Part shown: one piece after another, positions 2,322 to 41,454 of the stretch
How positions within the stretch are numbered: the stretch's first letter is position 1
Layout of the letters: the number at the start of each line of letters is the position of its first letter
Assembly: GCA_950097015.1 (NCBI GenBank)
Contig: CATNEN010000034.1
Span: 2,356,001-2,420,000, forward strand
DNA: 64,000 bases
Source of the DNA: Macrostomum hystrix
Lineage: Eukaryota > Animalia > Platyhelminthes
Direction: 5' to 3'
Translations under genes and position numbers: made by a program
Notes under the pieces: generated by a model
The model's input: the letters and a program-made list of their open reading frames with translations, nothing else
Told to the model about the DNA's origin: nothing
Databases searched by the model: none

Positions 2322-2327
2322 AATAAA
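2322..2327 (+). promoter_or_regulatory. Candidate polyadenylation signal of the zinc-finger gene
   Basis: AATAAA at the end of a ~1 kb AT/U-rich stretch after the stop codon, just before the 22-bp satellite. Confidence 0.4.
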
Positions 2328-2394
2328 ACATTTGTTAAAAATGAATTTTCCATTTTTTCGAATTACTGATCAATACTTCATAGTATTCTAATTT

Positions 2395-3050: not shown

Positions 3051-3793
3051 GAGAGTCTGTGAACACCCAAGAAGAGTCTGTGAATACTAAAAGTTAATGA
3101 ATTGTAAACAAAAAAGCAATTGCGAGTGAGTATTGTTGCAGAAACGAAAGTATTTATTAGTCATACTGAAAACATACTTTATTTTCGGGGGAAAATCAGA
3201 AAATTATTTCTAGTAAAAAGTCAGGGCTGCAAAGCGCAGAGCAATGAAGAATTTGGAGCAGCCATCAAGTCACGCATGTCCAGTATGAAACCAGTCTCAT
3301 GGATAAGCAGTGAATTTGAGATCATGCTTGTCCAAGCAACAACAATTGAGAACCCGATCAGTCTGTCAATCAGCTCTGTAAGGCAGCAGCTGAGAATTAG
3401 GGAAGCGGAGCGAAGTCGGCCCGCTGCCTAGCAACCAATGTAAACAAGCGTAAACCTTGGAGACAGGCCATCTCTGCTCACCGGGGCAAGTACTCAAGAG
3501 TGTCGGTCATGACAGTATTTTGCAGTCAAACACCGGGTTTAGCCAGGTATGTTGCGCGCATTGTTGACAGGTAAAACAGGTAAAATTATCCGCACGAAGC
3601 TTTACGAAACTGTTTTACAAAAGTGACCAAATATATTTGGAAAAATGTTCAAGACAGCACGGAATTGAGAAGTAGCAATAGCAATGCTCAGCTGAGAACA
3701 CTATCAATTAAGATCAACTTTTTAACTTCTGTGTCAAAGAGACAAGATCTCAAGGAGACCCCAGACTGCCAAACAATACAGTATTCTCCAATT

Positions 3794-5160: not shown

Positions 5161-5678
5161 CCGTCCAACGCCGCAGAGACGCAGTTTTTTGTTTTAGTAA
5201 GCTAAAAATCACGTTTCAGTGTCATTGCATTGTCCATTAACGAGCGTCAAATTCTCGATAAATGAAAATTGAGAAATAAACACATTTGAAAAAACAGACA
5301 CAAAGACGTACCGTCTAAGGTTTCATTAAACTGAATGTGCTCAAGGTGCAACCACACACCTAAGAAGAAAACTCAGTGCTTAGCAACTAAACGTTAAATT
5401 ACATCTCAATCGACTTCAACCGTAACACAATACCAGGAAACTCATCCGCAGTGCTTTGATCCGATGTCAACAATCACTAAGCGAAGCGGGCACAACCAAA
5501 CTTTCTCCGTGTAAAACACTCAACCTAGCTGGCTGCAGTCTAAATTCAGAGCCCCAAAATTCAAAACGAAAACGGATGGTTCTTACCTGAGTCGGTACTT
5601 GCAATTGAGAAAAATTGCTCATGAAAACATTGAGAACAAATTATGTCCGATTGAATGACTTTTTCGTTCAAACGAAGA

Positions 5679-5691: not shown

Positions 5692-5792
5692 AAATCGCAA
5701 CACGCTTGACCAATTAAAAAATGTATATATAAATGTCAAAAACTAAATACGGTGAAAAAAAGTCTAACTTACTTGTTCTAAGAGCCAACACC

Positions 5793-8700
5793 ATGGCTGT
5801 GCTGCTGTTTTCATTGCTGCTCGCGCAGTGCATCGCGCAGTCGATGTCGCTGAACTTCAAGGTGGCGGTGATTGTTGAGAACGGTGCCGTGAACAGATCC
5901 GTCATTGACAACGCCTTCAGCCACCGAGTCAACTCCAACTGGCGAGTCCTGCTCGGTCACTCTGTCAGCTACGTCGAGGTCAACGCCACATCGTGCAGTG
6001 CAACGCAAATCGTCAAGTCACGTGAGTCACTAATCAGGCGAACAGTTCATATTTGTGTGCACAATATTCGGTTATCGAAACGCGGCCCGCAGTGTGTCAG
6101 CAGACCGGACTGTCGGGTGTCATCGCGGTGGGTCAGTGCGGAACTCTGTCGCAGATTTCGGCAGCCACAAAGACCATGCGACTGCCGCTCATCTCACTGC
6201 CGACAGGAATATGCGATCACCAATATTCTGCTTCAGGTGAGACCTTGCTACTCGTTGCTGCAACTTTGAGCACTATATCTCAAGCACTGTCGATGTTTCG
6301 ATTTGTGGCACCATTCTCCGACACTCCAGACTTCAACTTGTTCGGAGTGCACACCTCGTGGCACATGGTGAATGCTGCAGTGGAGGCGATGGCAGCAAAG
6401 GCAGCGATGCAGGTCGCAATCTTCTTCGACAGCAAACAGAGTAAGAGTAAAATATGCCTATCAGTGCGACAAGAAATGCTTGTATGATTTCATTGAAAGC
6501 AAAGCACAACGCAACGTTTGTGTAGGCTCGGCGGTCCTGCAGACGTTGCAAAACTCGCTCACAAAGCGTGGAATCAGCTCTCTCACATTCCAAGTGGACT
6601 CAAACAGTGGTGTTCTGATCTCAAGCCTCGACTCGCACTTGACTCGACTGCTCAAGAAGAAGGTGTACCACATTCTGGTGCTGGCTGAGCCACCAAGCGT
6701 GTTTGCCATTCTCGATCACGCAAACGTGTCCCTGGTGCTGCAGCAGAACTACTTCTGGCTCATCATCGACACGGGAATCGCCAAGGCACAACTGAGACCT
6801 CGCATTCTTCCGAACTCGAATGTCGCTCTCGTGAGAGGAGGCACAACGGGACTGAATGTTCCCGGATCGTGCTCTGCTCCAGTGCGAGACGTGTTCGACA
6901 GTTGCGACACGGACTGGATCCGAGTAACTCTTTCACCTGATGACAGTTGACCAAATAACCATTTCGGATATTTAGAAAGCATTGACAAATACAACCAAAT
7001 AATATTTTCAGACTCTCGATGCTCGGTTCATCGATGCAGTCGAGGCTCTCGCGAAGGCTCTGAACGACTCGGTCACGGAAGCGTCCTTCAATCCGAGCAA
7101 CGCCACATGCAGTCCATTGCAGGTGTGGAGCTCGGGACCCTCCGTCTATTTGAAGCTGATGAATGTGAGTGCACTGCTTTTGACATTTTACCATGTACCC
7201 GGGATGAGATGCGATGAGGCTTGCGTGAGCATTGTGTCACTTTGACTTCTCATGTGACAGATGTCGAGCTACAACTCGAATCGAGGCCTCATATCGTTCA
7301 ACTCTTCGACTGGTCACTTCGACGCTCAAGGCATTGAGGTGGTCGGCAGCTATAACGAGAGACTGTCATCGCCTCTCCAGTTCATCCAGTCCGCGATTTA
7401 CAGCACCGAGAGCAGCTCGCTGAGCGTTCAGTTCCGAGAGAAGGGCTTGCATCTCGTATTCCCGAACACCTTCATTGGATTCAAGAATGAGACGATAATT
7501 ATTTGCAGTCCTGAAGTAGGCAAGCTTCTAGTACTGTCGATTTTACATTCGAATTTGGTTGACTGTTTGAACTTCAAACAGGAGCTCGTTCATTGTAGAT
7601 TCTACCGTTCACAAGGTATACTCAGCCGCCGTTTTTTAACAAGACTGTGATCGCAACAGGAATGCTGACTGATATCTTGGAGATTCTATCGAAACGTTTG
7701 GACTTTCGGTGAGAATCGTATCTTTTGCACACGCTGGTTTCTGGTACGAAGTGTCGGCTCTGCAATTTTCTTTATCGGTGACCATACAGGTACATACTGA
7801 AGACGCCAGACGACGGACAGTGGGGTGGACCGCAACCTGGAAAGAGTTACTTCTCCGGTTGCGTTGGAGAAGTCCAGAGAGGAGTGAGTCATTGTGCTTC
7901 ACCTTTATCAACAGATGTGTGCAAATTGATAGAATCTACAAACCAATAATTTAAGAGCAACTGCTGCAAATGATTGAACTGCAAAAATTAATAAACGTTT
8001 CAGCTCGCCAGACTGGGCGGCGGCCCGTTTACCAAGACCAGCGTCCGCGACGGTGTTGTTGACTTCGCTACGCCGCTGTTCCAAGAAGCCAATGGCATTC
8101 TAGTGCCCCGGCCCCCGCCTGCGTCCAAGCTGTGGAATGTCTACACACCGTTCAACTACGATGTGTGGATTCTGATTATTGTCCTTCTCTTTGTCTGCGC
8201 CGGTCTGACCTGGGTCCTTGCCTATTTTTCACCTTTCACCGCGTTCAACCTGAACCTGGAGTTCGCCATCGCTGACGAGATCTGGTTGCAGGAGTATCTT
8301 TGGAGTGTGGTTGGCAGCTTCCTGCAGCAGGGTCAGGACTTTTATCCGTTCGCTATGTCTCCGAGAGCTGTGATGGCCTTCTGGTGGATGTTCACCGTTG
8401 TTGTCTATGGCGCTTATACAGGTAAGTGCTTTACTGGAATAAGTGCACTGAGGCATTTGTTTCGAAGTTCAAAGCTTGATCGAGTGGGCTAAAAAATTAT
8501 AGGTTAAGTAGTTAGTGCAATATTACTTCTAGTTTTTATGAAAAAAGTATAACTGGTGCGATTACGAGCTATACCAAATTTTATGAATAACACTTATTTA
8601 TGAACAAATTAACAAAAACATGAGCTTTATTGCAAGAATCTGGCTGTTGCTGCATTTGTCATCATTGTCTGGGTGCCTGATTCCCTATACGGAGTACTCA

Positions 8701-10765
8701 CAATTACTTTCATTGAAAGTAATACTTGTAAATAGGATTTATCTTCGATAGTTCCCCATGTGACTATTGAATCTTATTCCCATTTTTTATTCTCCGACGA
8801 ACAAAATACCTCACCGAAACCACCGATTTCCATGTCCAGCCAAGTGTGGTCATCCTGTGATAGGGAAGCCATTTCATTTGAAAGTCTGAACCATATAGAC
8901 ACAGATTTATGAACATACTAAAACTGGAACTATTTTATAGGATGAAAGTTGGAGGCTGAGTGGCAGAGCGGTTAACGCGTTTGTCACTCGCACTTAAGGT
9001 CCCTGAGCTCGATAACGCGGCAATGCCACACTCATTTGGGGCGCAGCCGCGGAGAGATTGTTATATGAGGATGAAATTTACGCCCTTGAGGGCCAACCTC
9101 CAAGGCACAGCGATAGTGCTCAGTGCCTGACGATGAGAAAGTGAGAAAGCGGAATGGGCAGAATTGCCTCCTCGCTGGCTGCGGGTCTGGTGTCACCAAG
9201 TGATGTGCCCGTGCCCGCAGCCCTCCTGCAAGTATTATATTATTATATATTATTATTATATTAAGATGAAAGTTCAAGCAGCTCATTTTATTTATGGACT
9301 AAAAAGCGATAATTTTCATCTATTTGAAAGCGGGGTCGATTAAAAAACTTTGGATGAACTTGTCCGTATACTTGAAAAATTATCAGGTGACCTAACTGCT
9401 CACCTGACCATCAGCATTACGGACCTGCCGATCAAGACGCTGGACGACTTGGTCTCGCAGTCGGCCATCAAGCCGCTGCTACCAGCCGCTACAAACATTG
9501 AAACTCTCGTGTCCATGAGCACTGGCGGAGTCTATAGGAAAGTGGCGGAGAGCATGGTTCTTGCCGAGAGCGTTAACAGCTGCATTGATCGGGTCTGTGC
9601 TTGCCATCTGTTTATGGTTATCTTGCTTTCAATTTTGCTTGTTATCAATCAACAATCAAATGTTAAAATGTAGAAGAAATGTGGAAGTACGAGCGTAATT
9701 CTATGTGCATTCTTAACATATGAGCGATGATAATAATATTATGTGCTGGAGGCTGGGCGAGCCAGTAGTGATCCTGTCCATTTCGCTGACCCGTGAGCAC
9801 ACACTCACACGGGTGTGTACATCTGTACTCACCCTCACAGTGCTTTTGGGGGTTAGCCCCTGAAAGGCAATAAGTCTATAAGCCTCCTCTTCGCGGCTGT
9901 GCCCTAATGAATGAGGCCTCGGAATCGAGCTCAGGACCATGGTGCCAATGAGCAACAATTGGGAACGACAATAATTGAAGTCCATTTGAACTTAAACGTA
10001 AACTGCCTCTGAAAGATCACAAGTGCCAGCTTCTGCACCAAAAGTTAACAAGCTGCATGGCGAATTCTTCCACAAATATAGCTCTTTCTCCGTCCCCACC
10101 GCAGGTGTTCAAAGAGAGTGTGGCCTGCATCACGGACTACACTGCACTGCTGTACGTGGCCAGGGCTAACTGTAGCCAGGTCTACCTGGCCAATGAGGTC
10201 TTCAATACGGCCACTGTGGCCTTCGTGTACCCGGACGACGCGTTCTACGGTCCCAACTTTGACTTTCAGTGAGCAAAAAGCTGAAATGGTGGTTTTGAGG
10301 CGTTTGTAACCAGGGACATGCAAATCACACGAATGTGCAAGAGAAAACTGCAAAGTCAGACTCTTAATGATCTTTTCGTTCAAATATGTTGACACGAATC
10401 GAGCATCTTGCGTACTTGTACTGTAGTAGTCCGTTGCTACTGGTGGCAAGGTTCTATGGTTCTCTAAGTTTTCCTAAAACCTACTTCTCATAAAGTCAAT
10501 CGAACTGACCCCCAACCGTCCCTGTAGGTTCCAAAAGATGCAGGAGACGGGCATCCTTCATAAGCTGTTCAACACCTACTGGTCAAGCGACGCCGTCTGC
10601 TCTACCGGAAGCTCCACCGAAGCCGACTCCATCAACCTGGAGGGCAGCGGTGGCTGCTTCATCGTCACCCTGGCCTTCTACGTGCTGGGCATTGTGATTC
10701 TGTTCGTGGAGCTGCTGTGGACCAAGGCGCTGAAGAAGCAGCCTCTCGACTGTGCCGTCTACTGA
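5793..10765 (+). CDS. Ionotropic glutamate receptor / IR-like channel subunit, copy A (12 exons, about 854 aa)
   Basis: Hand-spliced GT-AG exons 5793-6021, 6093-6236, 6285-6440, 6526-6923, 7012-7164, 7261-7515, 7599-7708, 7790-7883, 8004-8421, 9387-9592, 10105-10268, 10528-10765 sum to 2565 nt in frame. Signal peptide, ATD, S1 (DGQWG, PFTKTSVRDGVVDF), M1, pore SFLQQG, M3 YTGDLTAHLT, S2 and M4 are all present. Confidence 0.9.
8951..9264 (+). mobile_element. tRNA-derived SINE with target-site duplication, in intron 9 of copy A
   Basis: A-box TGGCAGAGCGG (8961-8971), B-box-like GAGCTCGATAAC and a (TAT)n-type tail. Flanked by the direct repeat GATGAAAGTT at 8941-8950 and 9265-9274. Confidence 0.85.
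9720..9975 (-). mobile_element. Diverged SINE of the same family, in intron 10 of copy A
   Basis: Reverse strand shows GGTCCTGAGCTCGATTCC, GGGCACAGCCGCG, GGGGCTAACCCCCAAAAGCAC and an AT-rich tail, collinear with the 8951 element. Ends are approximate. Confidence 0.6.
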
Positions 10766-11206
10766 GCGGCTGAACGAGGAGCTCAGTCGGTAGCGACCTG
10801 ACCGACGGACTGTCGCAAACTCTCCAGTGACACGAACTTGTTTAGTCAAGCGAACAGTCTTAGATTAGCACACAAGTAGTTTGCACCTGGTGTGTTAAAC
10901 TGCCGAGCCCATCAAATTTTTTCCTTTTCCTTTACACATACAACCTTGCACATTCCGATTAGTTAGCTCGTAGAAACCGACGGTAACTACGCTAGTTTTC
11001 ACTCTGAATCCCTATGATGCACACGCATCGAAAATGTGTTACTGCTGCCGATAATGCGTTATTATCTGCTGGTATTGTGATACTAGCGGCCCACCTGATC
11101 TCGTCAAATCTGCTGCGTATGTTACGAAAGTAACTCGCTTATGTAATCTAGTGATAGATTCGGCCAACTTTAGAGCATACGCTCGTATGTGAGCAACCAC
11201 AGAGAG

Positions 11207-12915
11207 ATTAGACTAAGAGAGATGAGACTAAGAGAGGTGAGACTAAGAGAGGTGAGACTAAGAGAGGTGAGACTAAGAGAGGTGAGACTAAGAGAGGTGA
11301 GACTAAGAGAGGTGAGACAGGCGAGGGATGAGACTAAGAGAGATGAGACTAAGAGAGGTGAGACTAAGAGAGGTGAGACTAAGAGAGATGAGACTAAGAG
11401 AGGTGAGACTAAGAGAGGTGAGACAGGCGAGGGATGAGACTAAGAGAGATGAGACTAAGAGAGGTGAGACTAAGAGAGATGAGACTAAGAGAGGTGAGAC
11501 TAAGAGAGATGAGACTAAGAGAGGTGAGACTAAGAGAGGTGAGACTAAGAGAGGTGAGACAGGCGAGGGATGAGACTAAGAGAGATGAGACTAAGAGAGA
11601 TAAAACAGGCGAGGGATGAGACTAAGTGAGGTGAGACTAAGAGAGGTGAGACAGGCGAGGGATGAGACTAAGAGAGATGAGACTAAGAGAGATGAGACTA
11701 AGAGAGATAAAACAGGCGAGGGATGAGACTAAGAGAGGTGAGACTAAGAGAGGTGAGACTAAGAGAGGTGAGACTAAGAGAGGTGAGACTAAGAGAGGTG
11801 AGACTAAGAGAGGTGAGACTAAGAGAGGTGAGACAGGCGAGGGATGAGACTAAGAGAGATGAGACTAAGAGAGATGAGACTAAGAGAGATAAAACAGGCG
11901 AGGGATGAGACTAAGTGAGGTGAGACTAAGAGAGGTGAGACAGGCGAGGGATGAGACTAAGTGAGGTGAGACTAAGAGAGATGAGACTAAGAGAGATAAA
12001 ACAGGCGAGGGATGAGACTAAGAGAGATGAGACTAAGAGAGGTGAGACTAAGAGAGGTGAGACTAAGAGAGGTGAGACTAAGAGAGGTGAGACTAAGAGA
12101 GGTGAGACAGGCGAGGGATGAGACTAAGAGAGATGAGACTAAGAGAGATGAGACTAAGAGAGATAAAACAGGCGAGGGATGAGACTAAGAGAGGTGAGAC
12201 TAAGAGAGGTGAGACTAAGAGAGGTGAGACTAAGAGAGGTGAGACAGGCGAGGGATGAGACTAAGAGAGATGAGACTAAGAGAGATGAGACTAAGAGAGA
12301 TAAAACAGGCGAGGGATGAGACTAAGTGAGGTGAGACTAAGAGAGGTGAGACAGGCGAGGGATGAGACTAAGTGAGGTGAGACTAAGAGAGATGAGACTA
12401 AGAGAGATAAAACAGGCGAGGGATGAGACTAAGAGAGGTGAGACTAAGAGAGGTGAGACTAAGAGAGGTGAGACTAAGAGAGGTGAGACTAAGAGAGGTG
12501 AGACTAAGAGAGGTGAGACAGGCGAGGGATGAGACTAAGAGAGATGAGACTAAGAGAGATGAGACAGGCTAGGGATGAGACTAAGAGAGATGAGACTAAG
12601 AGAGATGAGACAGGCTAGGGATGAGACTAAGTGAGGTGAGACTAAGAGAGGTGAGACAGGCGAGGGATAAGACCAAGAGAAATGAGACAGGCGAGGGATG
12701 AGACTACGAGAGATGAGACTAAGAGAGATGAGACAGGCTAGGGATGAGACTAAGAGAGATGAGACTAAGAGAGATGAGACAGGCTAGGGATGAGACTAAG
12801 TGAGGTGAGACTAAGAGAGGTGAGACAGGCGAGGGATGAGACCAAGAGAAATGAGAGAGGCGAGGGATGAGACTACGAGGGAGGAGACAGGGGAGAGATC
12901 AGACAGGAGAAATTA
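11207..12915. repeat. 15/16-bp minisatellite (GAGACTAAGAGAGGT / GAGACAGGCGAGGGAT)n, GAGATGAGAC family
   Basis: About 1.7 kb purine-rich array between receptor copies A and B. Confidence 0.95.
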
Positions 12916-13713
12916 GAGAAAGGTGAGTATGTATGGCTAAGGCCATTTTTAGCAAAATATCTATCCATTTGGTGTCATTAGGTATGAAAAAATCAAAACA
13001 CAGTTTTATTTTCTAAAATAAAGTTGCACGTGTCAGGACGTTCGCTAAAATACTCCAGTCACCCAGTCTAAAAGTTGATTTGGTAAGGTTGCAAAAATCG
13101 ATAAAGTGAATTTCACGAACCATCGCCTCCGTGACAAACGATAAATAGCATGTTAAACTAAAAAAATCGCGAAGAATCTCATTTTACCAGCTCCAATGAA
13201 CACTCAGACAAACGGGTGAGGTTTCTACATATAGATGAACCTCTGATCAGTAATTGGGACCCGGTCACGCATTGGATGCAGTAAAAAACATCCACTTCCG
13301 TATGCCTAGTTCTCTCACGCTGACAAAATCGATTATGAAGAGGAAACTAAGCTATGCAGCCAGACATACTCCTACTTGGACTGTCCATCATGACTTTTTT
13401 CACACAATGACTACTTTTCCGAAAGGCAAATTCGTACGTCACACACCACAACAGAGAAGTCGATAAAGGACCAGTGGGTTAGCAAAGCTACTTACTGGCT
13501 ACAATGTTAGGATGAAGAAACGGAAATCTGAACTGATCTTCAATTCTGCAGTCTCACTTTTCAGTTTCAATCAATTTAGCGGTGAGAAGCTGTAGTACTC
13601 AACCGAGAAGATGCTCAAATACCTGCAATTATATATTCAGTGTGAAATTTAAGAAAAAAGCCTGACCATACTTGTAAGAGAATACGCTTTTAAATGCGTA
13701 TTGTGGTGACAAG

Positions 13714-13726
13714 GTTGCTAAACAAC
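13714..13726 (+). promoter_or_regulatory. RFX X-box-like motif upstream of receptor copy B
   Basis: GTTGCTAAACAAC about 80 bp upstream of the ATG; TATAAA at 13746. Confidence 0.6.
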
Positions 13727-13806
13727 AGGAAAAACAAATCAAAAGTATAAAGTGAACTCTGAACCTATAACGGAATAACCCAATCAATGTTTGCCAAGAA
13801 AGCACC

Positions 13807-16800
13807 ATGGCTGTGCTGCTGGTTTCATTGCTGCTCGCGCAGTGCATCGCGCAGTCGATGTCGCTGAACTTCAAGGTGGCGGTGATTGTTGAGAACGGTG
13901 CCGTGAACAGATCCGTCATTGACAACGCCTTCAGCCACCGAGTCAACTCCAACTGGCGAGTCCTGCTCGGTCACTCTGTCAGCTACGTCGAGGTCAACGC
14001 CACATCGTGCAGTGCAACGCAAATCGTCAAGTCACGTGAGTCACTAATCAGGCGAACAGTTCATATTTGTGTGCACAATATTCGGTTATCGAAACGCGGC
14101 CCGCAGTGTGTCAGCAGACCGGACTGTCGGGTGTCATCGCGGTGGGTCAGTGCGGAACTCTGTCGCAGATTTCGGCAGCCACAAAGACCATGCGACTGCC
14201 GCTCATCTCACTGCCGACAGGAATATGCGATCACCAATATTCTGCTTCAGGTGAGTCATATCTACTCGTTGCTGCATCCTTGAGCACTATATCTCAAGCA
14301 CTGTCGATGTTTCGATTTGTGGCACCATTCTCCGACACTCCAGACTTCAACTTGTTCGGAGTGCACACCTCGTGGCACATGGTGAATGCTGCAGTGGAGG
14401 CGATGGCAGCAAAGGCAGCGATGCAGGTCGCAATCTTCTTCGACAGCAAACAGAGTAAGAGTAAAATATGCCTATCAGTGCGACAAGAAATGCTTGTATG
14501 ATTTCATTGAAAGCAAAGCACAACACAACGTTTGTGTAGGCTCGGCGGTCCTGCAGACGTTGCAAAACTCGCTCACAAAGCGTGGAATCAGCTCTCTCAC
14601 ATTCCAAGTGGACTCAAACAGTGGTGTTCTGATCTCAAGCCTCGACTCGCACTTGACTCGACTGCTCAAGAAGAAGGTGTACCACATTCTGGTGCTGGCT
14701 GAGCCACCAAGCGTGTTTGCCATTCTCGATCACGCAAACGTGTCCCTGGTGCTGCAGCAGAACTACTTCTGGCTCATCATCGACACGGGAATCGCCAAGG
14801 CACAACTGAGACCTCGCATTCTTCCGAACTCGAATGTCGCTCTCGTGAGAGGAGGCACAACGGGACTGAATGTTCCCGGATCGTGCTCTGCTCCAGTGCG
14901 AGACGTGTTCGACAGTTGCGACACGGACTGGATCCGAGTAACTCTTTCACCTGATGACAGTTGACCAAATAACCATTTTGGATATTTAGAAAGCATTGAC
15001 AAATACAACCAAATAATATTTTCAGACTCTCGATGCTCGGTTCATCGATGCAGTCGAGGCTCTCGCGAAGGCTCTGAACGACTCGGTCACGGAAGCGTCC
15101 TTCAATCCGAGCAACGCCACATGCAGTCCATTGCAGGTGTGGAGCTCGGGACCCTCCGTCTATTTGAAGCTGATGAATGTGAGTGCACTGCTTTTGACAT
15201 TTTACCATGTACCCGGGATGAGATGCGATGAGGCTTGCGTGAGCATTGTGTCACTTTGGCTTCTCATGTGACAGATGTCGAGCTACAACTCGAATCGAGG
15301 CCTCATATCGTTCAACTCTTCGACTGGTCACTTCGAAGCTCAAGGCATTGAGGTGGTCGGCAGCTATAACGAGAGACTGTCATCGCCTCTCCAGTTCATC
15401 CAGTCCGCGATTTACAGCACCGAGAGCAGCTCGCTGAGCGTTCAGTTCCGAGAGAAAGGCTTGCATCTCGTATTCCCGAACACCTTCATTGGATTCAAGA
15501 ATGAGACGATTCGTGTCTGCTGTACTGATGTATGTGTTCTTCTGGACACATTATCTGTCACTTTTAGTTCGCACTTTGGGTTCTCAATCTAAAACTTTAA
15601 ACTTTCCAGATACTTCCATTTGCGGTTTATGAGCAAGTTTTCCCAAATAAGACAGTTATTGTTAGTGGAATGGTCAAGGATGTTCTAGACATTTTGTCCA
15701 AAAAGCTGGACTTCAAGTGAGTATTATTTTATTTCCTATTGCACACACGGTCTGATATTGTCGAATTTACTCGTAATTTATGTAAGTTATCCACAAAATG
15801 TACACTTTAAGTAGCTGCCTGCTTTTGAGTGTACATTTGTTCTCAACTAGAGATACGTTTGTACGCTCTTTAAAAAATCAGTGGGACATGTCTATTCTAA
15901 TTGAGTTGTAGACTTCTGGCACGAACCCCTAGTTTTGGCAGAGAAACAATCGGAACTGCAACTTTGAGGCTTAAATATGTTATGGATGTTGAATAACAGA
16001 TTTTTAATTCGCTTGGCGCCAATCACGGTTACTTTGTTACTTTCGATGGTATTGTATTTAAAAATTAGAAATTCAAAACAGCTCTGTTTTTCTTGAATTT
16101 TCTTCTGGCTTGACATGTTGGCCTACAAACCATGACTTCAAACAGGTACACGGTGAAGGCACCTGACGATGGACAATGGGGTGGGCCGCAAGCCGGCAAG
16201 AGCTATTTCTCGGGCTGCGTCGGAGAGCTACAGAGGGGTGTAAGTAGCAGGTATTCGAATTGTTTCAATCGCTTTTATAAAGACCAGGGAGATTATCCCC
16301 ATCGTGATCATGAACGATTTGCAGATTGTCGACTTGGGGGGCAGCACCTTCACCAAGACCAGCATCCGCGACGGCGTTGTTGACTTCGCTACGCCGCTGT
16401 TCCAAGAAGCCAATGGCATTCTAGTGCCCCGGCCCCCGCCTGCGTCCAAGCTGTGGAATGTCTACACACCGTTAAACTACGATGTGTGGATTCTCGTGGT
16501 CGTGTTTATCTTTGCCTCATCCGCAATCACCTGGTTCCTGGCCTTTTACTCGCCTTTCTCGGCCTACAACCTGAACCTGGAGTTCGCCATCGCTGACGAG
16601 ATATGGTTGCAGGAGTACCTGTGGAGTGCGGTCGGCAGCTTCCTGCAGCAGGGCCAGGACTTTTATCCGTTCGCCATGTCTCCGCGAGCTGTGATGGCCT
16701 TCTGGTGGATGTTCACCGTGATTGTCTACGGCACATACACAGGTGTGCAATAATTTTATTTACAAAAATCTGCTCATTGGCATGCAAGTATAAAAATATT

Positions 16801-17917
16801 GTTCTGACATTTCACAGCAGAAATAATTTAGGACATAAATTGGGCATTTTTCAGCAGACCATTATCAATAGCACATACATATATATAGCTCATATATAAT
16901 CCTAGGCGACCTGACCGCACACCTGACAATCAGCATCACCGACCTGCCCATTAAAACGCTGGATGACTTAGTGTCCCAATCCGCCATCAAGCCGTTGGTG
17001 CCATTCGCCACAAACATCGAGACTCTGTTTTCCATGAGCACGAGCGGGCCGTATCGCAAAATTGCAGACACCATGTTGCTAGCAGATTCCATCAACAGCT
17101 GCATCGATCGGGTCTGTAATCATTTTTTCCTGTGTTATTCGAAGCAATGCAGTTTTTTCGGTTAATTTGCCAGTCCAGGCTGAATCAGACAAAAGCATTG
17201 CAACACATCTCACATAACAGCTCGCATTTCTTACAGCTTGAGAAATCTGCTAAAACCAATGTTGAAAGTGAATCAACGACCCGCTGTAGGTATTCAAGGA
17301 GAATGTGGCCTGCATCACGGACTACACTGCCCTGTTGTATGTGGCCAAAGCCAACTGCAGCAAGGTCTACCTGGCTGACGAGATATTCAACACGGCCACA
17401 GTGTCCTTTATGTACCCAGAGGACGCCTTCTACCAACAGAGCTTCGACTTCGAGTAAGTCTCATGGACAAAGCAATAGAAGCGCTTATGTGAATCTCACA
17501 TGCTATTTTTGCTGATAATTAGCATTTTGACCGAAAGCTGAATGCAGATATTAAAGTGATCTTAGAGACGAAGGGTTAGACGCAGGTCAGTTTATAACTA
17601 GAATATATTAAAATATCTGACCATCCGATTTTTTCCAGTCTAGAAGAGAGCCAATCAGATGTTAAAACGTTAATTTCAGGTTCCAGAAGATGCAGGAGAC
17701 GGGCATCATGCAGAAGCTGTTCAACACCTACTGGTCAAGCGACGCCGTCTGCTCTACCGGAAGCTCCACCGAAGCCGACTCCATCAACCTGGAGGGCAGC
17801 GGTGGTTGCTTCATCGTCACCCTGGCCTTCTACGTGCTGGGCATTGTGATTCTGTTCGTGGAGCTGCTGTGGACCAAGGCGCTGAAGAAGCAGCCTCTCG
17901 ACTGTGCCGTCTACTGA
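13807..17917 (+). CDS. iGluR/IR-like channel subunit, copy B (12 exons)
   Basis: Exons 1-6 are copy A shifted by 8014 bp (exon 6 = 15275-15529), then 15610-15716, 16146-16239, 16325-16742, 16906-17111, 17290-17453, 17680-17917. Intron phases match copy A and no stops were found. Confidence 0.9.
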
Positions 17918-18343
17918 GCGGCTGAACGAGGAGCTCAGTCGGTAGCGACCTGACCGACGGACTGTCGCAAACCCTCCAGTGAAGCGAACTTGTTTAGTCA
18001 AGCGAACAGTCGTAGATTAGCACACATAGTATGCACCAGGTGTGTTAAACTTTACATTCCACACCTTTCTCTGGCCCAACGTATTTGTTGTCATGCGCCG
18101 TTTGTACAACCTGTTTTATCAGTGAATTTTTCTCGACTTAAGGCCTCATGTGTTTATCTTTGGCATTACTATATCCTCCCATAGAAGATATTTCTTGCTT
18201 TAACTAGGTCCAGTCATAACTTAACGCGGTTTAATCTTGGGTCCCTTCTTCTGATAAATGTAACCATATTTTTTTTGCTGCTAACAATCACCGATACCGT
18301 TTATAAGCTTTTGGTCCAATGGTCCTTCGCACTGCCATCAAAA

Positions 18344-18995
18344 CAGGCCATAGCACACGATTGTACATTATGTATAAGATAATACCCCAGATTTTATATC
18401 CTTGGCACGGCTAAGGATGCGTTTCATGGCCGAAGCGAAGCCGGTGCCAAGAAACTGCGTCCGAGAAGTGGCCTAGGCCATAGACAACGAAATCTGGGGT
18501 ATTGTAATATTTAATATCCAGATTGGGCAGCGGATGCGTTCCAAGCCGGTTTCGCCATAGACAACGAAAATTAAATTATTTTAGGCCATGAAATGAAATT
18601 GACGGTTTAGATAGGGAGCCAAGCTGGAGATAAAAATATGTTCAGAAACAACTGGCCATTTGGTGGAAGTTTGAATGAGCCTTTAGAGAAGTATAAAATA
18701 ATCCCCACTTGATTTCGTTTCTTTGGCCTAGGAGTCGTTCTAGGCCATAGACAATGATTTCAAGTGGGGATTTTAATATTTAATTGTCGCACGGCTCGAC
18801 CCAGTGATTCTGCCATAGACAAGTATTTCTTGGCCTCCAAGAAACGCCTGAGTGGAGTCTCAACTACATGGAAAGAATGGTTTTTTAGCCATAGACAAGT
18901 ATTTCTTGGAGTCCAAGAAATGAAAATACACTGAGGAGATAGGCAGCTGGTCGAGGCCAAAGCGGGGATTAAATCAAGATTATGCCATAGAAATG
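18344..18995. repeat. Degenerate array of GCCATAGACAA motifs with internal palindromes; probable non-autonomous DNA element
   Basis: Motif at 18477, 18554, 18744, 18812, 18888 and (degenerate) 18984; 14-bp inverted repeat 18381-18394 / 18490-18503. Confidence 0.55.
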
Positions 18996-19836
18996 TTTGT
19001 TAATGCACAAAGCGTACCAAGGTGTAGCTTATGATTTTCTACCGAAATCCGACTTAATGCACCAAGCACCATGTCTAGAACTACACCAAGTCTGGTACTT
19101 GTATTTAGGTAAAGAGTACGAAATGACTAAATAAAGCAGGCTTTAATTGCGAATTTTAACTGGCTAATACTTTGTCTAATAAAAACCTACCTAAAACTAT
19201 TTGTGACGCCATGTTAAAGATTGCATGTCTGAGGTGCGACCACCTTAAAAGCAATGCATTTGAATCATTAATCCTCGGTTGACAATGGTAACATTAGTTG
19301 AAAAAGGGATTCGACTGGTCCTCAAGGACAAAAATTATGAAACATATACGAGTAATTTCCTGTTGCAAACGTCAACAGGTATCGAATAGAAAGCCTATGT
19401 GCATCCAAAAGTCAGGAAGAAGCGACAGACAATATGGTGCAATCATAAAAACAAATATTTTTCCACATGGATCTAGAGAACATTCCGATAGATTAGAAAC
19501 TCAAGCAAGAAGAATCCGTTCATGTGCAATGAGTCGCTCCACAGCCATCACTAGGCACTGTCACCAAGACAGACATGCGTAAACTGATCCGAAAGGACAC
19601 AGATTTACTCAATTTAACTAAAGTTTTCAAATCGCTAAAAAGTGAAACTCAAGCACAATGCAAAGCATGTTCAATTACTTTCAAATTCACGTGAATCCCG
19701 CGCGATACATCCCCAAGAATGAAATTTAAGTATGGTTGCACTATCTCAAAAGGAAGGTAAGTAAATTAAGTTATTTTCATATTAAATAGAATAGCTACAG
19801 TACTCCATGTTGCCTGACTGAAAAATTAGACAAAAG

Positions 19837-19849
19837 GTTGCTAAGCAAC
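19837..19849 (+). promoter_or_regulatory. RFX X-box (palindromic) upstream of receptor copy C
   Basis: GTTGCT-A-AGCAAC perfect palindrome about 70 bp upstream of the ATG; TATAAAA at 19870. Confidence 0.65.
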
Positions 19850-19919
19850 AGCAGAAAAACAAGTGAACCTATAAAAAAGAAACATCCAAACCATTATGGA
19901 AAAAATGTTGGCCAACACC

Positions 19920-22900
19920 ATGGCTTTGCTGCTGGTTTCATTGCTGCTCGCGCAGTGCATCGCGCAGTCGATGTCGCTGAACTTCAAGGTGGCGGTGATT
20001 GTTGAGAACGGTGCCGTGAACAGATCCGTCATTGACAACGCCTTCAGCCACCGAGTCAACTCCAACTGGCGAGTCCTGCTCGGTCACTCTGTCAGCTACG
20101 TCGAGGTCAACGCCACATCGTGCAGTGCAACGCAAATCGTCAAGTCACGTGAGTCACTAATCAGGCGTACAGTTCATATTTGTGTGCACAATATTCGGTT
20201 ATCGAAACGCGGCCCGCAGTGTGTCAGCAGACCGGACTGTCGGGTGTCATCGCGGTGGGTCAGTGCGGAACTCTGTCGCAGATTTCGGCAGCCACAAAGA
20301 CCATGCGACTGCCGCTCATCTCACTGCCGACAGGAATATGCGATCACCAATATTCTGCTTCAGGTGAGTCATATCTACTCGTTGCTGCATCCTTGAGCAC
20401 TATATCTCAAGCACTGTCGATGTTTCGATTTGTGGCACCATTCTCCGACACTCCAGACTTCAACTTGTTCGGAGTGCACACCTCGTGGCACATGGTGAAT
20501 GCTGCAGTGGAGGCGATGGCAGCAAAGGCAGCGATGCAGGTCGCAATCTTCTTCGACAGCAAACAGAGTAAGAGTAAAAGATGCCTATCAGTGCGACAAG
20601 AAATGCTTGTATGATTTTATTGAAAGCAAAGCACAACACAACGTTTGTGTAGGCTCGGCGGTCCTGCAGACGTTGCAAAACTCGCTCACAAAGCGTGGAA
20701 TCAGCTCTCTCACATTCCAAGTGGACTCAAACAGTGGTGTTCTGATCTCAAACCTCGACTCGCACTTGACTCGACTGCTCAAGAAGAAGGTGTACCACAT
20801 GCTGGTGCTGGCTGAGCCACCAAGCGTGTTTGCCATTCTCGATCACGCAAACGTGTCCCTGGTGCTGCAGCAGAACTACTTCTGGCTCATCATCGACACG
20901 GGAATCGCCAAGGCACAACTGAGACCTCGCATTCTTCCGAACTCGAATGTCGCTCTCGTGAGAGGAGGCACAACGGGACTGAATGTTCCCGGATCGTGCT
21001 CTGCTCCAGTGCGAGACGTGTTCGACAGTTGCGACACGGACTGGATCCGAGTAACTCTTTCCCCTGATGACAGTTGACCAAATAACTTTTACGAGCATAG
21101 ATAGCAGTGATTAATGTATCAAAGATCAATTTTCAGACTCTCGATGCTCGGTTCATCGATGCAGTCGAGGCTCTCGCGAAGGCTCTGAACGACTCGGTCA
21201 CGGAAGCGTCCTTCAATCCGAGCAACGCCACATGCAGTCCATTGCAGGTGTGGAGCTCGGGACCCTCCGTCTATTCGAAGCTGATGAATGTGAGTGCACT
21301 GCTTTTGACATTTTACCATGTACCCGGGATGAGATGCGATGAGGCTTGCGTGAGCATTGTGTCACTTTGGCTTCTCATGTGACAGATGTCGAGCTACAAC
21401 TCGAATCGAGGCCTCATATCGTTCAACTCTTCGACTGGTCACTTCGACGCTCAAGGCATTGAGGTGGTCGGCAGCTATAACGAGAGACTGTCATCGCCTC
21501 TCCAGTTCATCCAGTCCGCGATGTACAGCACCGAGAGCAGCTCGCTGAGCGTTCAGTTCCGAGAGAAGGGCTTGCATCTCGTATTCCCGAACACCTTCAT
21601 TGGATTCAAGAATGAGACGATTCGTATCTGCAGTCCCGATGTAGTGCTTCTTTGCCGTTGAATTTTTCGTCGGACTATTTTTATTGTACTGTATTACTTG
21701 CTGAATGATTTTGTTCGTTTTCAGATTTCTCCATTTACTTTGCATCTGCAAGTCTTTCCCAACAAGACGGTCATTGTTGGAGGAATGGTCAAAGACATCT
21801 TAAATATCCTGTCCAAACAATTGGATTTCAGGTGAAAAGACATTTTCTTTTCGAAGTGGTACAAGCTATCGCTAAAGAACTAAGATCAAACAGCTAGATG
21901 TTTTTGATTAACGAACGTGGTGAAAATCAAACGCTACTCGTTTAGTAGCTCGACTTTTACTGTCTTCCAGTCATTCAACTTGAGTCTTCATACTTCCATG
22001 TAAAACTTATCCAGGTACACCGTCAAAACCTCGGACGACGGTCAATGGGGCGGACCGCAGGCAGGCAAGAGCTACTTTACAGGCTGCGTTGGAGAACTGC
22101 AGAGAGGCGTAAGTTGATATTGGGTTTAAAGCTTGATGACACAGAAAGACTGATGAGATGTTTTTAGAACGGATTGTGTTTTCAGAGTTTTTCCTTAGTA
22201 ACCTTTTGTTTCATTTTTTGCTCTACGTTCGTAGATATTTTTTCCTTTTGATGATAAAGTTTGATTCGGATCTCAATCTGAAAATCTATTCCTATAGATC
22301 GTAGACATTGCCGCCGGTCCATTTACCAAGACCAGCGTCCGCGACGGTGTTGTTGACTTCGCTACGCCGCTGTTCCAAGAAGCCAATGCCGTTCTAGTGC
22401 CCCGGCCCCCGCCTGCGTCCAAGCTGTGGAATGTCTACACACCGTTCAGTTACGAGGTGTGGATTCTCGTGGTCGTGTTTATCTTTGCCTCATCCGCAAT
22501 CACCTGGTTCCTGGCCTTTTACTCGCCTTTCTCGGCCTACAACCTGAACCTGGAGTTCGCCATCGCTGACGAGATCTGGTTGCAGGAGTACCTGTGGAGT
22601 GCGGTCGGCAGCTTCCTGCAGCAGGGCCAGGACTTTTATCCGTTCGCCATGTCTCCGCGAGCTGTGATGGCCTTCTGGTGGATGTTCACCGTGATTGTGT
22701 ACGGCACATACACAGGTGTGCATAGTTATATTTACAATGAACGTCTTAATGCCAGATATGTATAAAAATATTCGTCTAGTCGAGATATTCAACAATTCTC
22801 GTCGAAGTGTCTAGTGGCTAGAACTACCAATAATGCTGCTCACAAATTTTTCTGCTCACAATATTTCATCATGTAGCCATGTCGGCTATATCTTTTTACT

Positions 22901-24410
22901 ACCTTGCATTGATTAAACTGTTTATATTTTCATTTGTGAACCAATATGTATTCACAATAGAGGTTTATGTAGAGCAATGTTAGCTGTCCTTATCACCTGG
23001 GTCTACGACTAGAATCTCTGAATATCTCAACAATGCTGACGTCGGACGGCTTTGAAAGTCAGTTCATCGTAAAGGGTGGAACGTTTTGATTCAGATGGTG
23101 GGCTTTCATTTGGTTTTGTGAGCAATCGTGAAGTAGGCAGTGGATATTTGAAATATCCACGTGGTCTTTCCCCGTGGGAATTAGAGTGGTCCTTCTACTG
23201 TTAAGGCCGCAGGATTCCGGATCGGAAATCCGTGACAGTATCAGAAGGACCGGGTCATGTCAAAAACTATCCAGACACTGATGTATTTATAATCGGAAGT
23301 ACTTTACCATGTGCGAACAAAATCGCAGGAGACCTGACTGCTCACCTGACAATCAGCATAACGGACCTGCCTATTAAGACACTGGACGACCTGGTATCTC
23401 AATCGGCCATCAAGCCGTTGGTGGTCAGTGGTACAAATATTGAGACCCTGCTATCCATGAGCACCAGCGGACCGTATCGAAAAATTGCAGACACCATGCT
23501 GATTGCTGATAACGTCAACAGCTGCATGGATCGGGTTTGTGGTCTTATAGAAGGCTCGACTTATTGCTAATTAACTTGATTCATTGAATTAACACAGCCA
23601 ACATCCCTCGACGTCCAGGTATTCAAGGAGAGTGTTGCCTGCATCACGGACTACACTGCCCTGTTGTATGTGGCCAAAGCCAACTGCAGCAAAGTCTACC
23701 TGGCTGACGAGATATTCAACACGGCCACGGTGTCCTTCGTGTACCCGGAGGACGCCTTCTATGAGCAGAGCTTCAACTTTGAGTAAGACTCATTTATGTT
23801 TATTCAGGCCTTCTGTTAGTACAACTTGATCGAATAGAAGATTGTACTAGCTTTTTACCATTGACATTCATTAGTGTTTATTAATATAATTGGCCCTACC
23901 ATTAGCACAACTTGTTAACACAACTTAAGCGAGCATTGGACTAGCTTTTTACGATAGGCATTAATTAATTAATTGGTGTTCATTTAAACCTGTCCAACGA
24001 AAAAGAACGACCAGGCGCTCGGTATTAATAAAGCTACAAAAATGTTTATAAAGCTAAAGCTATAAAGCTACGAATGTTCAACGAACGCAGTAAAAATCGA
24101 TATGTCACCCGTTTAGTAGCTCGACAGTCAAACTCTAAGAGAGCCATTCAGATGTTAAAACGTCAACTTCAGGTTCCAGAAGATGCAGGAGACGGGCATC
24201 ATGCAGAAGCTGTTCAACACCTACTGGTCAAGCGACGCCGTCTGCTCTACCGGAAGCTCCACCGAAGCCGACTCCATCAACCTGGAGGGCAGTGGTGGTT
24301 GCTTCATCGTCACCCTGGCCTTCTACGTGCTGGGCATTGTGATTCTGTTCGTGGAGCTGCTGTGGACCAAGGCGCTGAAGAAGCAGCCTCTCGACTGTGC
24401 CGTCTACTGA
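19920..24410 (+). CDS. iGluR/IR-like channel subunit, copy C (12 exons)
   Basis: ATD exons match copies A and B; exon 6 = 21386-21640, then 21725-21831, 22015-22108, 22298-22715, 23329-23534, 23619-23782, 24173-24410. Phases are conserved and no stops were found. Confidence 0.9.

Positions 24411-26334: not shown

Positions 26335-41454
<15,120 letters not shown>

What the first reader, a model, noticed from the sequence alone, without database searches (positions are those of the whole stretch)
5793..24410. Tandem iGluR/IR-like receptor array with constant framework and variable ligand-binding cassette
Seen: the three intact copies are almost base-identical from the ATG through about 1.7 kb of ATD exons and most of their introns, and again over the M4/C-tail exon and start of the 3' UTR. 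Identity collapses abruptly at the codons ETI, the ATD/S1 junction. The S1 and S2 exons and their introns are clearly diverged. Known: S1/S2 form the agonist clamshell, while the ATD and M4 mediate tetramer assembly. Inference: a chemoreceptor repertoire in which concerted evolution keeps subunits co-assembly-compatible while the ligand-binding module diversifies. ATD-bearing tuning receptors would differ from insect tuning IRs, which lack a full ATD.
Basis: partly seen in the sequence, partly recalled or inferred. Interest (0 to 1): 0.82.

Follow-up and report, generated by a model that had tools for sequence, protein, structure and literature searches.

The report
Receptor genes with copy-pasted front halves
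Three neighbouring flatworm genes for glutamate-receptor-type ion channels are old, well-diverged copies whose front (assembly) domain and last exon were recently overwritten to near-identity by gene conversion, a well-known process that I found no report of for this channel family.

Summary
The window holds three intact, same-strand, 12-exon genes: A 5793-10765, B 13807-17917, C 19920-24410 (839/838/838 aa). A decayed fourth copy, F, lies at 3777-5174. They are full-length iGluRs (ATD-LBD-pore). Their only close relatives found are Macrostomum lignano proteins.

From 4-9 nt before the ATG to the codons E-T-I (A 7496), the copies are 97.5-99% identical, introns included. At four-fold degenerate sites, 0 of about 222 differ in any pair. 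In S1a and S2, 30-36 of 65-72 differ, and dS is about 0.8 to saturated. The last exon plus about 100-135 nt of 3' UTR is also homogenised, as is a roughly 140-nt island at the end of S1.

Independent short-read unitigs break exactly at 7496, with about 2.3-2.8x depth on the shared side. An RNA contig joins the shared ATD exons to A-specific S1 exons. An assembly artefact is therefore very unlikely.

Best reading: old tandem paralogues undergoing repeated, regionally bounded gene conversion. The LBD is under purifying selection (dN/dS about 0.1-0.2), and the pseudogene's front end is homogenised too. A second M. lignano paralogue group shows the same break at protein level, and the scan noted a similar mosaic elsewhere in this genome (s1-258478).

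The parts
3777..5174 (+). Copy F, a pseudogene. Positions 3794-4312 are 99% identical to A 5825-6343 (part of exon 1, intron 1, exon 2, intron 2 and 14 nt of exon 3). It has no ATG. Old remnants of exon 11 follow at 4459-4536 (65-69% aa, then stop codons), and of exon 12 at 5108-5155 (56-67% aa). Exons 3-10 are missing.
5793..10765 (+). Gene A, 12 exons, 839 aa. Exons: 5793-6021, 6093-6236, 6330-6440, 6526-6923, 7012-7164, 7261-7515, 7599-7708, 7790-7883, 8004-8421, 9387-9592, 10105-10268, 10528-10765. The 3' UTR reaches at least 11227-11239.
   Evidence: Splice joints in RNA contigs. Complete ORF with GT-AG at every intron. Colinear exon-by-exon match to the M. lignano paralogue P0017.
13807..17917 (+). 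Gene B, 12 exons, 838 aa. Exons: 13807-14035, 14107-14250, 14344-14454, 14540-14937, 15026-15178, 15275-15529, 15610-15716, 16146-16239, 16325-16742, 16906-17111, 17290-17453, 17680-17917.
19920..24410 (+). Gene C, 12 exons, 838 aa. Exons: 19920-20148, 20220-20363, 20457-20567, 20653-21050, 21137-21289, 21386-21640, 21725-21831, 22015-22108, 22298-22715, 23329-23534, 23619-23782, 24173-24410.
   Evidence: C-type variants appear in RNA contigs.
5784..7496 (+). Homogenised block 1 in A, equivalent to B 13803-15510 and C 19911-21621. It covers the signal peptide and the whole ATD (exons 1-6, up to the codons E-T-I) with introns 1-5.
   Evidence: The DNA unitig 6309-7496 ends exactly here.
7497..8030 (+). 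Old-diverged S1a core in A: the last 19 nt of exon 6, exons 7 and 8, the first 27 nt of exon 9, and their introns. dS is saturated in all three pairs and dN is 0.15-0.25.
8031..8173 (+). Homogenised island in exon 9, equivalent to B 16352-16494 and C 22325-22467. It encodes the end of S1 (with the conserved Thr and Arg), the S1-M1 linker and pre-M1. dS is 0-0.065.
8174..8421 (+). M1-M3 pore region. A differs from B and C (dS 0.43-0.93). B 16484-16742 and C 22457-22715 are nearly identical (2 mismatches in about 260 nt), which marks a separate B-C conversion tract.
9387..10268 (+). Exons 10-11 in A: the M3-S2 linker and the S2 core. This part is old-diverged (dS 0.7-1.7). The first 30 codons have dN = 0, so they are conserved by selection, not by conversion. 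B and C share a younger tract in the first 100 nt of exon 11.
10526..10901 (+). Homogenised block 2 in A, equivalent to B 17678-18051 and C 24171-24510. It covers exon 12 (last S2 helix, M4 and the short C-tail) plus about 100-135 nt of 3' UTR, and it begins 2 nt before the acceptor site. dS is 0.02-0.07.
11126..12930 (.). Spacer between A and B, filled by a 15-nt minisatellite.

Best explanation
A, B and C are ancient tandem paralogues of a Macrostomum-specific branch of full-length (ATD-LBD-pore) ionotropic glutamate receptors. Repeated non-allelic gene conversion between the neighbouring copies has recently overwritten some segments. These are the signal-peptide-plus-ATD block with its five short introns, a roughly 140-nt island at the end of S1 and pre-M1, and the last exon with the start of the 3' UTR. 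B and C share further tracts in M1-M3 and exon 11. The S1a and S2 cores have not been converted for a very long time.

Shown here:
- the mosaic itself;
- that it is real in raw-read graphs and in RNA;
- that introns and four-fold sites are homogenised, so this is sequence transfer and not purifying selection.

Inferred:
- Tracts stop at the ATD/S1 junction because conversion needs homology, and the S1a/S2 cores and their introns are now too diverged.
- Chimaeric clamshells are probably also selected against.
- The proteins are most likely subunits of amino-acid-type ligand-gated cation channels. Their identical ATDs and M4 would allow them to co-assemble.
For: - Mosaic identity and break points.
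- Four-fold sites: 0 of about 222 differ in the ATD, against 42-55% in S1a+S2 (p = 1e-21 to 1e-28).
- dS by segment: 0.003-0.007 (ATD), 0-0.065 (island) and 0.02-0.07 (exon 12), against 0.7 to saturated in S1a, the M3-S2 linker and S2a.
- Internal control: the 30 codons of the M3-S2 linker have dN = 0 but dS 0.7-1.7. That is what conservation by selection looks like, and the ATD looks different.
- Several dS levels and segment-specific pairings (B = C in M1-M3 and the 5' part of exon 11) indicate several events of different age.
- Diverged intron patches inside the block (intron 2; intron 4 of C) indicate patchy tracts.
- Pseudogene F has a 99% identical front but old, broken rear remnants.
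- Independent data: a short-read unitig, 6309-7496 at depth 208, ends at the break point. The A-specific unitig 7467-8057 has depth 88. Positions 5880-6338 have depth 302, matching four copies. Exon 12 has depth about 214.
- An RNA contig (X3 record 14, 987 nt) runs from shared ATD exons through A-specific exons 7-9 without a mismatch.
- Family assignment: exon 9 hits PF00060 at 48 bits and GluA2/GluK2 at 1e-10. The paralogue P0017 is 56% identical to A over 811 aa. P0017 carries PF01094, PF10613 and PF00060 and aligns end to end with GluK2 at E = 7.6e-40.
Against: - The direction and donors of the transfers are not known, because no sister-species orthologues or other loci of this genome could be read.
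- GC3 shows no clear biased-gene-conversion signal.
- A run test on variable sites of only three sequences detects just the B-C tract. Where all three copies are identical there are no variable sites to test.
- The best DNA run may be the sample the assembly was made from. It is independent of long-read polishing but not of the individual or line.
- No single long read across the whole 20-kb array was seen.
Confidence: 0.78

Rival explanations
1. Selection keeps one common ATD and M4 so that the subunits stay able to co-assemble, and selection for different ligands keeps the LBD cores apart. The array would then be a tuning-receptor repertoire. This adds a cause to the conversion mechanism and does not exclude it.
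For: - The block boundary sits at a domain junction, not at a random place.
- A second M. lignano paralogue group repeats the pattern at the same codon at protein level. ATD identity is 96-98%; S1a or S1b-to-end identity is 57-60%.
- The residues just before the conserved S2 Thr differ between copies: PAAT, PFAT, VSGT. By alignment with GluA2/GluK2, and from my memory of those structures, this is where the ligand side chain is read.
- The ATD is known to drive subunit assembly (PMC2924276).
Against: - dN/dS in S1/S2 is 0.1-0.2, so no excess of replacements.
- LBD segments remain 66-93% identical at amino-acid level, far from typical chemoreceptor divergence.
- The front of pseudogene F is homogenised without any protein to select.
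- In the second paralogue group the M4/C-tail is not constant (14/20 and 19/36 identical).
- The S1 strand carrying the ligand-binding Thr and Arg is itself homogenised.
- Both groups probably share exon structure, so an identical break could be mechanical.
- There are no data on expression site or ligand.
Confidence: 0.3
2. The reverse history. The three genes are very young whole-gene tandem duplicates, and their middle parts (S1a, pore, S2) were later replaced by conversion from older, diverged paralogues elsewhere in the genome.
For: - DNA depth over the M2-M3 coding part of A (8258-8454) is 481, above the three-copy level. Other loci therefore share 95% or more identical sequence there.
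- The family has other members in M. lignano.
Against: - It needs three different outside donors and at least six matching break points.
- The introns of the middle part differ completely in length and sequence between copies.
- Spacers and 5' flanks are unrelated between A and B/C.
- F carries old exon-11 and exon-12 remnants next to a young front, which fits an old array with a young overwrite.
Confidence: 0.1
3. Assembly artefact. The identical ATD blocks come from collapsed, duplicated or cross-polished repeats.
For: The genome is very repeat-rich. The best DNA run may be the source sample.
Against: - Short-read unitigs built without the assembly show one shared node ending at 7496, at about 2.3-2.8x the depth of the A-specific node. 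Depth is about 3.4-4x where F adds a fourth copy.
- Copy-specific differences exist inside the block, in intron 2, in intron 4 of C and as scattered SNPs. Cross-polishing would erase these.
- RNA contigs from another study join the shared ATD to A-specific S1.
- Public M. lignano proteins from an older assembly show the same kind of mosaic in another paralogue group.
Confidence: 0.03

Closest known systems
Regional gene conversion in clustered protocadherin variable exons (Noonan et al. 2004, as reviewed in PMC3966226; fugu clusters, PMC1852091)
   Same: Both are tandem same-strand receptor units. Some domains show near-zero synonymous divergence with a sharp boundary at a domain-coding border, while other domains stay diverse. 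In both cases the argument rests on synonymous sites.
   Different: - In protocadherins the units are single variable exons spliced to shared constant exons. Here each unit is a complete 12-exon gene, and introns are homogenised too.
- The protein is a ligand-gated channel, not an adhesion molecule.
- Here there are three copies, not tens.
Partial escape from concerted evolution in duplicated genes: RHCE/RHD exon 7 (Innan 2003, cited in PMC3966226), CEACAM1 paralogues (PMC7042247), Siglec-5/14 (PMC4042635)
   Same: Paralogues are homogenised along most of their length, with an island of old divergence where conversion is kept out.
   Different: In the Siglec and CEACAM paired receptors it is the ligand-binding domain that is homogenised. 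Here the ligand-binding cores are the part that escapes.
Animal non-NMDA (AMPA/kainate/delta-type) iGluRs, for example GluK2
   Same: - Same ATD-S1-M1-M2-M3-S2-M4 order.
- The pore loop has QQ at the Q/R position.
- The residues aligned to the S1 Thr and Arg and the S2 Thr are conserved.
- The paralogue P0017 aligns with GluK2 from ATD to M4.
   Different: - The gate motif reads AYTGDLTAHLT instead of SYTANLAAFLT.
- The S2 exons are too diverged to hit any solved iGluR on their own.
- About six residues are missing around the position of the alpha-amino-binding Glu in the GluK2 alignment of P0017.
- The ATD exon finds relatives only in Macrostomum lignano.
Insect and other protostome variant IRs (Croset et al. 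2010, PMC2924276)
   Same: Both are lineage-specific, tandemly expanded, sequence-divergent iGluR relatives.
   Different: Tuning IRs lack the PF01094 ATD, which only IR8a and IR25a keep. These genes have a full ATD. Membership of the IR clade was not tested by phylogeny.

Membership tests
iGluR superfamily | Ligand-gated ion channel domain (Pfam PF00060: M1, pore loop, M3, M4) | tested here: met
   Exon 9 of A (window 8004-8420) hits PF00060 at 48.2 bits against a cut-off of 30.8. It also hits GluA2/GluK2 chains at E about 1e-10.
iGluR superfamily | S1/S2 ligand-binding clamshell split by the pore (Pfam PF10613) | tested here: inconclusive
   No single window exon reaches PF10613. The S2 exons alone hit no solved iGluR. 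P0017, 56% identical and colinear exon by exon, scores 54.5 bits on PF10613. The joined model was not searched.
iGluR superfamily (full-length, non-IR type) | Amino-terminal domain (Pfam PF01094, LIVBP-like) | tested here: inconclusive
   The ATD exons alone give no Pfam hit. P0017 scores 51.7 bits over profile positions 12-336 of 353 and aligns with the GluK2 ATD. A aligns with P0017 from residue 33 to 839. UniRef names the M. lignano relatives 'ANF_receptor domain-containing'.
iGluR superfamily | Conserved gate motif SYTANLAAF and glutamate-contact residues (Arg, Thr, Glu/Asp) | tested here: inconclusive
   The gate motif is AYTGDLTAHLT in all three copies. The residues aligned to the S1 Thr and Arg and the S2 Thr are present in A, B and C (P0017-GluK2 alignment). 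The acidic residue falls in an alignment gap. Residue roles are recalled from GluA2/GluK2 structures, not tested.
Variant ionotropic receptors (IR, tuning type) | No PF01094 ATD; short N-terminus | tested here: not met
   About 420 residues of signal peptide plus ATD precede S1. The definition is from PMC2924276.
Variant ionotropic receptors (IR clade) | Phylogenetic placement inside the protostome IR clade | not tested
   No reference set of IR and iGluR sequences was fetched. Word searches returned only M. lignano proteins.
Concerted evolution by regional gene conversion | Synonymous and intron identity in the block, against old synonymous divergence elsewhere in the same genes | tested here: met
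Concerted evolution by regional gene conversion | Different segments support different pairings or ages (mosaic phylogeny) | tested here: met
   B = C in M1-M3 and in the 5' part of exon 11. All three copies are equal in the ATD, the island and exon 12. All three are far apart in S1a and S2a.
Concerted evolution by regional gene conversion | In sister species, paralogues group by species in the converted part and by orthologue in the rest | not testable with these tools
   No DNA from another Macrostomum genome was reachable. P0017 has no contig on record.

The most novel reading that the evidence does not exclude
In Macrostomum a whole lineage-specific iGluR branch may be organised as arrays with one 'constant' ATD per array and old, distinct LBD/pore cores. 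The ATD would be kept identical by conversion that always stops at the same ATD/S1 codon. That would make it a ligand-gated-channel counterpart of the constant/variable logic of clustered protocadherins. It would let array members co-assemble freely into heteromers of mixed ligand specificity.
Probability: 0.3. Interest if true: 0.65.

Novelty: new member of a known kind. Interest (0 to 1): 0.45.

Why it matters
This is an unusually clean, RNA- and read-supported example of domain-bounded gene conversion. Identity at four-fold sites and in introns runs right up to one codon, and old divergence starts beyond it.

It has an internal control (the M3-S2 linker) that separates 'conserved by selection' from 'homogenised by transfer'. 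It also has a pseudogene that shows the process runs without selection.

For iGluR biology it offers natural chimaeras: identical ATD and M4, with different LBD and pore. These could test how far the ATD decides subunit co-assembly.

For annotation it is a warning. Trees built on the ATD of these genes will be wrong, and gene predictors fuse such tandem copies, as the public M. lignano models do.

Tried and rejected
- My first gene model had a 20-nt intron 1 and one long exon 2. RNA joints 6021>6093 and 6236>6330 replaced it with a 12-exon model.
- The exon-7 acceptor was first placed 24-27 nt too far downstream. C lacks that AG, and all three copies share an in-frame upstream acceptor. The RNA contig length fits this: 204 nt lie between exons 6 and 9.
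- A Sawyer-type run test on variable sites is uninformative where all three copies are identical. It detected only the B-C tract and was replaced by four-fold-site contrasts.
- GC3 as a mark of biased gene conversion gave no clear signal.
- Pfam and PDB searches of single ATD, S1a and S2 exons gave nothing.
- The deep search with ATD exon 4 found only 13 proteins. All seven that I looked up are M. lignano, and the best is 61% identical, so the window's own genes are not in the public protein set.
- Word searches with P0009 and P0017 returned only M. lignano fragments.
- P0017 has no contig on record, so the second paralogue group could be compared only at protein level.
- A mobile-element origin of the block was rejected. 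Depth shows about 3-4 copies genome-wide, and the block ends in frame inside an exon.
- RNA-templated conversion was rejected, because introns are homogenised.
- Papers: I found no report of regional conversion in iGluR/IR arrays or in Macrostomum.
- The joined (spliced) protein models were used only inside my own scripts: for dN/dS, for three-way alignment, and for local BLAST against proteins already fetched. They were not sent to any search or folding tool.
Full report
**What is there.**
The self-comparison of the window finds three same-strand copies of a 4-5 kb unit starting near 5790, 13800 and 19915. A 520-nt fragment lies at 3794-4312.

I first built gene models by hand. I then corrected them with splice joints seen in RNA contigs of public runs: 6021>6093, 6236>6330, 6440>6526, 6923>7012 and 7164>7261. 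The correct spacing of exons 6-9 and 9-12 was read from the same contigs.

The result is three complete 12-exon genes with GT-AG at every intron, encoding 839, 838 and 838 residues. The scan's earlier notes call this genome a Macrostomum flatworm. In agreement, every relative whose source I looked up or that the word searches named is a Macrostomum lignano UniRef entry.

**What the proteins are.**
- Exon 9 of A matches Pfam Lig_chan above threshold and matches GluA2/GluK2 chains.
- The other exons are too short or too diverged to score alone.
- The M. lignano protein P0017 (816 aa) is 56% identical to A over 811 residues. It matches A, B and C colinearly, exon by exon.
- P0017 carries ANF_receptor, Lig_chan-Glu_bd and Lig_chan above threshold. 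It aligns with GluK2 from the ATD to M4 at E = 7.6e-40.

By this proxy the window genes are full-length iGluRs with an ATD. By the definition in Croset et al. 2010 (PMC2924276), that sets them apart from insect tuning IRs.

The branch is lineage-restricted. ATD exon 4, searched against 1.84 billion representative proteins, found 13 proteins, the best 61% identical. All seven that I looked up are from M. lignano.

All three copies share these sequence features:
- a gate motif AYTGDLTAHLT in place of SYTANLAAFLT;
- QQ at the Q/R position of the pore loop;
- the residues aligned to the S1 Thr and Arg and to the S2 Thr.

**The observation.**

The copies are 97.5-99% identical from 4-9 nt before the ATG to the codons E-T-I (A 7496, B 15510, C 21621). 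That point lies 19 nt before the exon-6 donor. Introns 1-5 are included, at 93.5-100% identity. Two small patches stay diverged: intron 2 (A and F against B and C) and intron 4 of C.

Identity returns 2 nt before the exon-12 acceptor. It then lasts through the stop codon and about 100-135 nt of a 3' UTR that is at least 460 nt long.

In between, introns are unalignable, with lengths such as 965, 163 and 613 nt. Exons are 65-88% identical.

- A roughly 140-nt island (A 8031-8173: end of S1, S1-M1 linker, pre-M1) is also homogenised.
- B and C share near-identical M1-M3 (2 mismatches in about 260 nt) and the first 100 nt of exon 11.
- The diverged part includes the pore of A.

**Statistics.**
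The table gives differences at four-fold degenerate sites.

| Pair | ATD | S1a+S2 | Fisher p |
|---|---|---|---|
| A-B | 0/222 | 36/65 | 3e-28 |
| A-C | 0/221 | 34/65 | 2e-26 |
| B-C | 0/222 | 30/72 | 2e-21 |

Nei-Gojobori dS by segment:

| Segment | dS |
|---|---|
| ATD | 0.003-0.007 |
| Island | 0-0.065 |
| Exon 12 | 0.02-0.07 |
| S1a | saturated in all pairs |
| M3-S2 linker | 0.7-1.7 |
| S2a | 0.8-1.3 |
| Exon 11, A vs B/C | about 0.95 |
| Exon 11, B vs C | 0.29 |
| M1, A vs B/C | 0.8-0.9 |
| M1, B vs C | 0.05 |

The M3-S2 linker is a useful internal control. Its 30 codons have no amino-acid change, yet their synonymous sites are saturated. This is conservation by selection. The ATD shows sequence identity instead, and that identity extends to introns.

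dN/dS in S1/S2 is about 0.1-0.2, which indicates purifying selection.

**Is it an artefact?**
Logan unitigs of a DNA run are built from short reads without the assembly. They show the following:
- One shared node, 6309-7496, at depth 208, ends exactly at the break point.
- The A-specific node 7467-8057 has depth 88, and the other A-specific nodes 75-91.
- Positions 5880-6338 have depth 302, where F adds a fourth copy.
- Exon 12 has depth about 214.

The ratios fit three full copies plus F. They also show that the block is not a high-copy element.

RNA contigs from a different study support the same structure. One contig (X3 record 14, 987 nt) runs from shared ATD exons through A-specific exons 7, 8 and 9 without a mismatch. 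Another joins A's exons 10, 11 and 12 to its 3' UTR.

RNA contigs also carry B- and C-type variants in the ATD and exon 12. This indicates that at least one of the other copies is transcribed. I did not lay reads on B or C themselves, because only one call was allowed.

Copy-specific differences inside the block also argue against cross-polishing.

**The fourth copy.**
F (3777-5174) lacks the start codon. It is 99% identical to A from codon 11 to 14 nt into exon 3, and then breaks off. Old remnants follow: exon 11 at 4459-4536 (65-69% amino-acid identity, then stop codons) and the start of exon 12 at 5108-5155 (56-67%).

A dead gene with an ancient rear and a brand-new front is what recent overwriting by a neighbour predicts. 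It shows that the homogenisation does not need selection on the protein.

**Mechanism.**
The simplest account is an old tandem array undergoing repeated non-allelic gene conversion, with tracts of about 100-1700 bp. Supporting points:
- there are several dS levels;
- segment-specific pairings occur (B = C in some segments);
- diverged intron patches lie inside the block;
- copy number is unchanged.

Tracts can persist only where homology persists. The S1a/S2 cores and their introns are now too diverged to pair, so the boundary is self-maintaining.

Whether it was set up by selection against chimaeric clamshells or for different ligands cannot be decided here.

Regional conversion with a sharp, domain-level boundary and near-zero synonymous divergence is well documented for clustered protocadherins (PMC1852091; PMC3966226). 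Partial escape from conversion is documented for RHCE/RHD, CEACAM and Siglec pairs (PMC3966226, PMC7042247, PMC4042635).

I found no report for iGluR/IR genes or for Macrostomum.

**Recurrence.**
Public M. lignano proteins of a second paralogue group (P0017, P0014/P0019, P0018, P0003, P0004/P0020, P0002) have different signal peptides but nearly identical ATDs.
- P0017 against P0014: 365/380 identical in the ATD, then 38/67 in S1a. The break comes just after K-N-Q-T-I, the same codon position as here.
- P0017 against P0018: 122/124 in the ATD part, then 203/336 from S1b to the end.

In that group the M4/C-tail is not constant. Several of those public models fuse two tandem ATD starts, a likely by-product of the same repeat structure.

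An unchecked first-reader note of this scan (s1-258478) describes a roughly 1.1-kb shared ATD tract between two diverged receptors on another piece of this genome.

The recurrence raises the chance that the constant-ATD design is a property of the family. Shared exon structure could also explain an identical break.

**Verdict on the interpretation.**
Concerted evolution of the ATD and M4 exon against old S1/S2 cores is supported.

The 'chemoreceptor repertoire', 'diversifying LBD' and 'kept co-assembly-compatible' readings are not tested. They are weakened by purifying selection in the LBD, 66-93% amino-acid identity across LBD segments, homogenisation of the Thr/Arg strand of S1, and the homogenised pseudogene.

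A hint in their favour is that the residues just before the conserved S2 Thr differ between the copies (PAAT, PFAT, VSGT). By alignment to GluA2/GluK2, and from my own knowledge of those structures, that is where the ligand side chain is contacted. Another first-reader note (s1-355544) points the same way.

**Limits.**
- They were used only inside scripts.
- The B and C gene models rest on homology to A and on intact frames and splice sites, not on their own RNA joints.

Noticed in passing
window 8849-9242 and 9637-9833 (intron 9 of gene A): An extremely high-copy repeat. The summed unitig depth reaches 531,228 in the DNA run and 1,900-4,000 in the RNA-like runs, with many rearranged joints and loose ends. 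It is probably a very abundant transposon or satellite that is also transcribed.
   Followed up: no
window 8258-8454 (M2-M3 coding part of exon 9 of A): DNA depth is 481, about 5-6 times the A-specific level and above the three-copy blocks, although B and C are only about 93% identical here. Other paralogues elsewhere in the genome may share 95% or more identical pore-coding DNA.
   Followed up: no
window 5879: The G>C variant that only pseudogene F carries in the assembly makes about 44% of DNA depth. It also sits in an RNA contig that begins in A's own 5' UTR at 5778. This suggests either polymorphism or ongoing exchange between F and A.
   Followed up: partly
window 8351: All three runs that cover this site (X1, X2, X3) read T where the window has C. 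This is either a strain difference or an assembly error in A's exon 9.
   Followed up: no
window 2286-3051, 11126-12930, 27916-28252, 29136-29578, 33682-34007, 34424-34765, 35406-36190, 36411-37414, 38302-38692, 44275-46633, 50773-51429, 53698-54745, 55508-56240, 58393-59929, 60613-62641: The window is packed with minisatellite arrays with units of 11/22, 15, 16 and 21 nt, among others. One array family recurs at 29.1, 35.5 and 60.6-62.6 kb, and in inverted orientation at 34.4 and 50.8-51.4 kb; the 35.5-kb array has a 16-nt period.
   Followed up: no
window 26857-27381 (-) and 40852-41454 (-): An UNC5-type netrin receptor gene lies on the minus strand downstream of the array. It has a UPA domain (75 bits) and an Unc5 N-terminal domain (45 bits), about 14 kb apart.
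   Followed up: partly
window 54-1352 (+): A 432-aa open reading frame with C2H2 zinc fingers lies upstream of the array.
   Followed up: partly
public proteins P0002, P0004, P0020 (M. lignano UniRef): These gene models contain two consecutive ATD starts. They look like predictor fusions of neighbouring, near-identical tandem copies in a second iGluR array.
   Followed up: partly
window 21743-21748 (C, upstream of exon 7's inner acceptor position): C has TG where B has an AG 24 nt inside exon 7, at the position I first took for the acceptor (in A an AG lies at the corresponding place, 27 nt inside). All three copies keep the in-frame upstream acceptor, which the RNA contig length supports for A.
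   Followed up: yes
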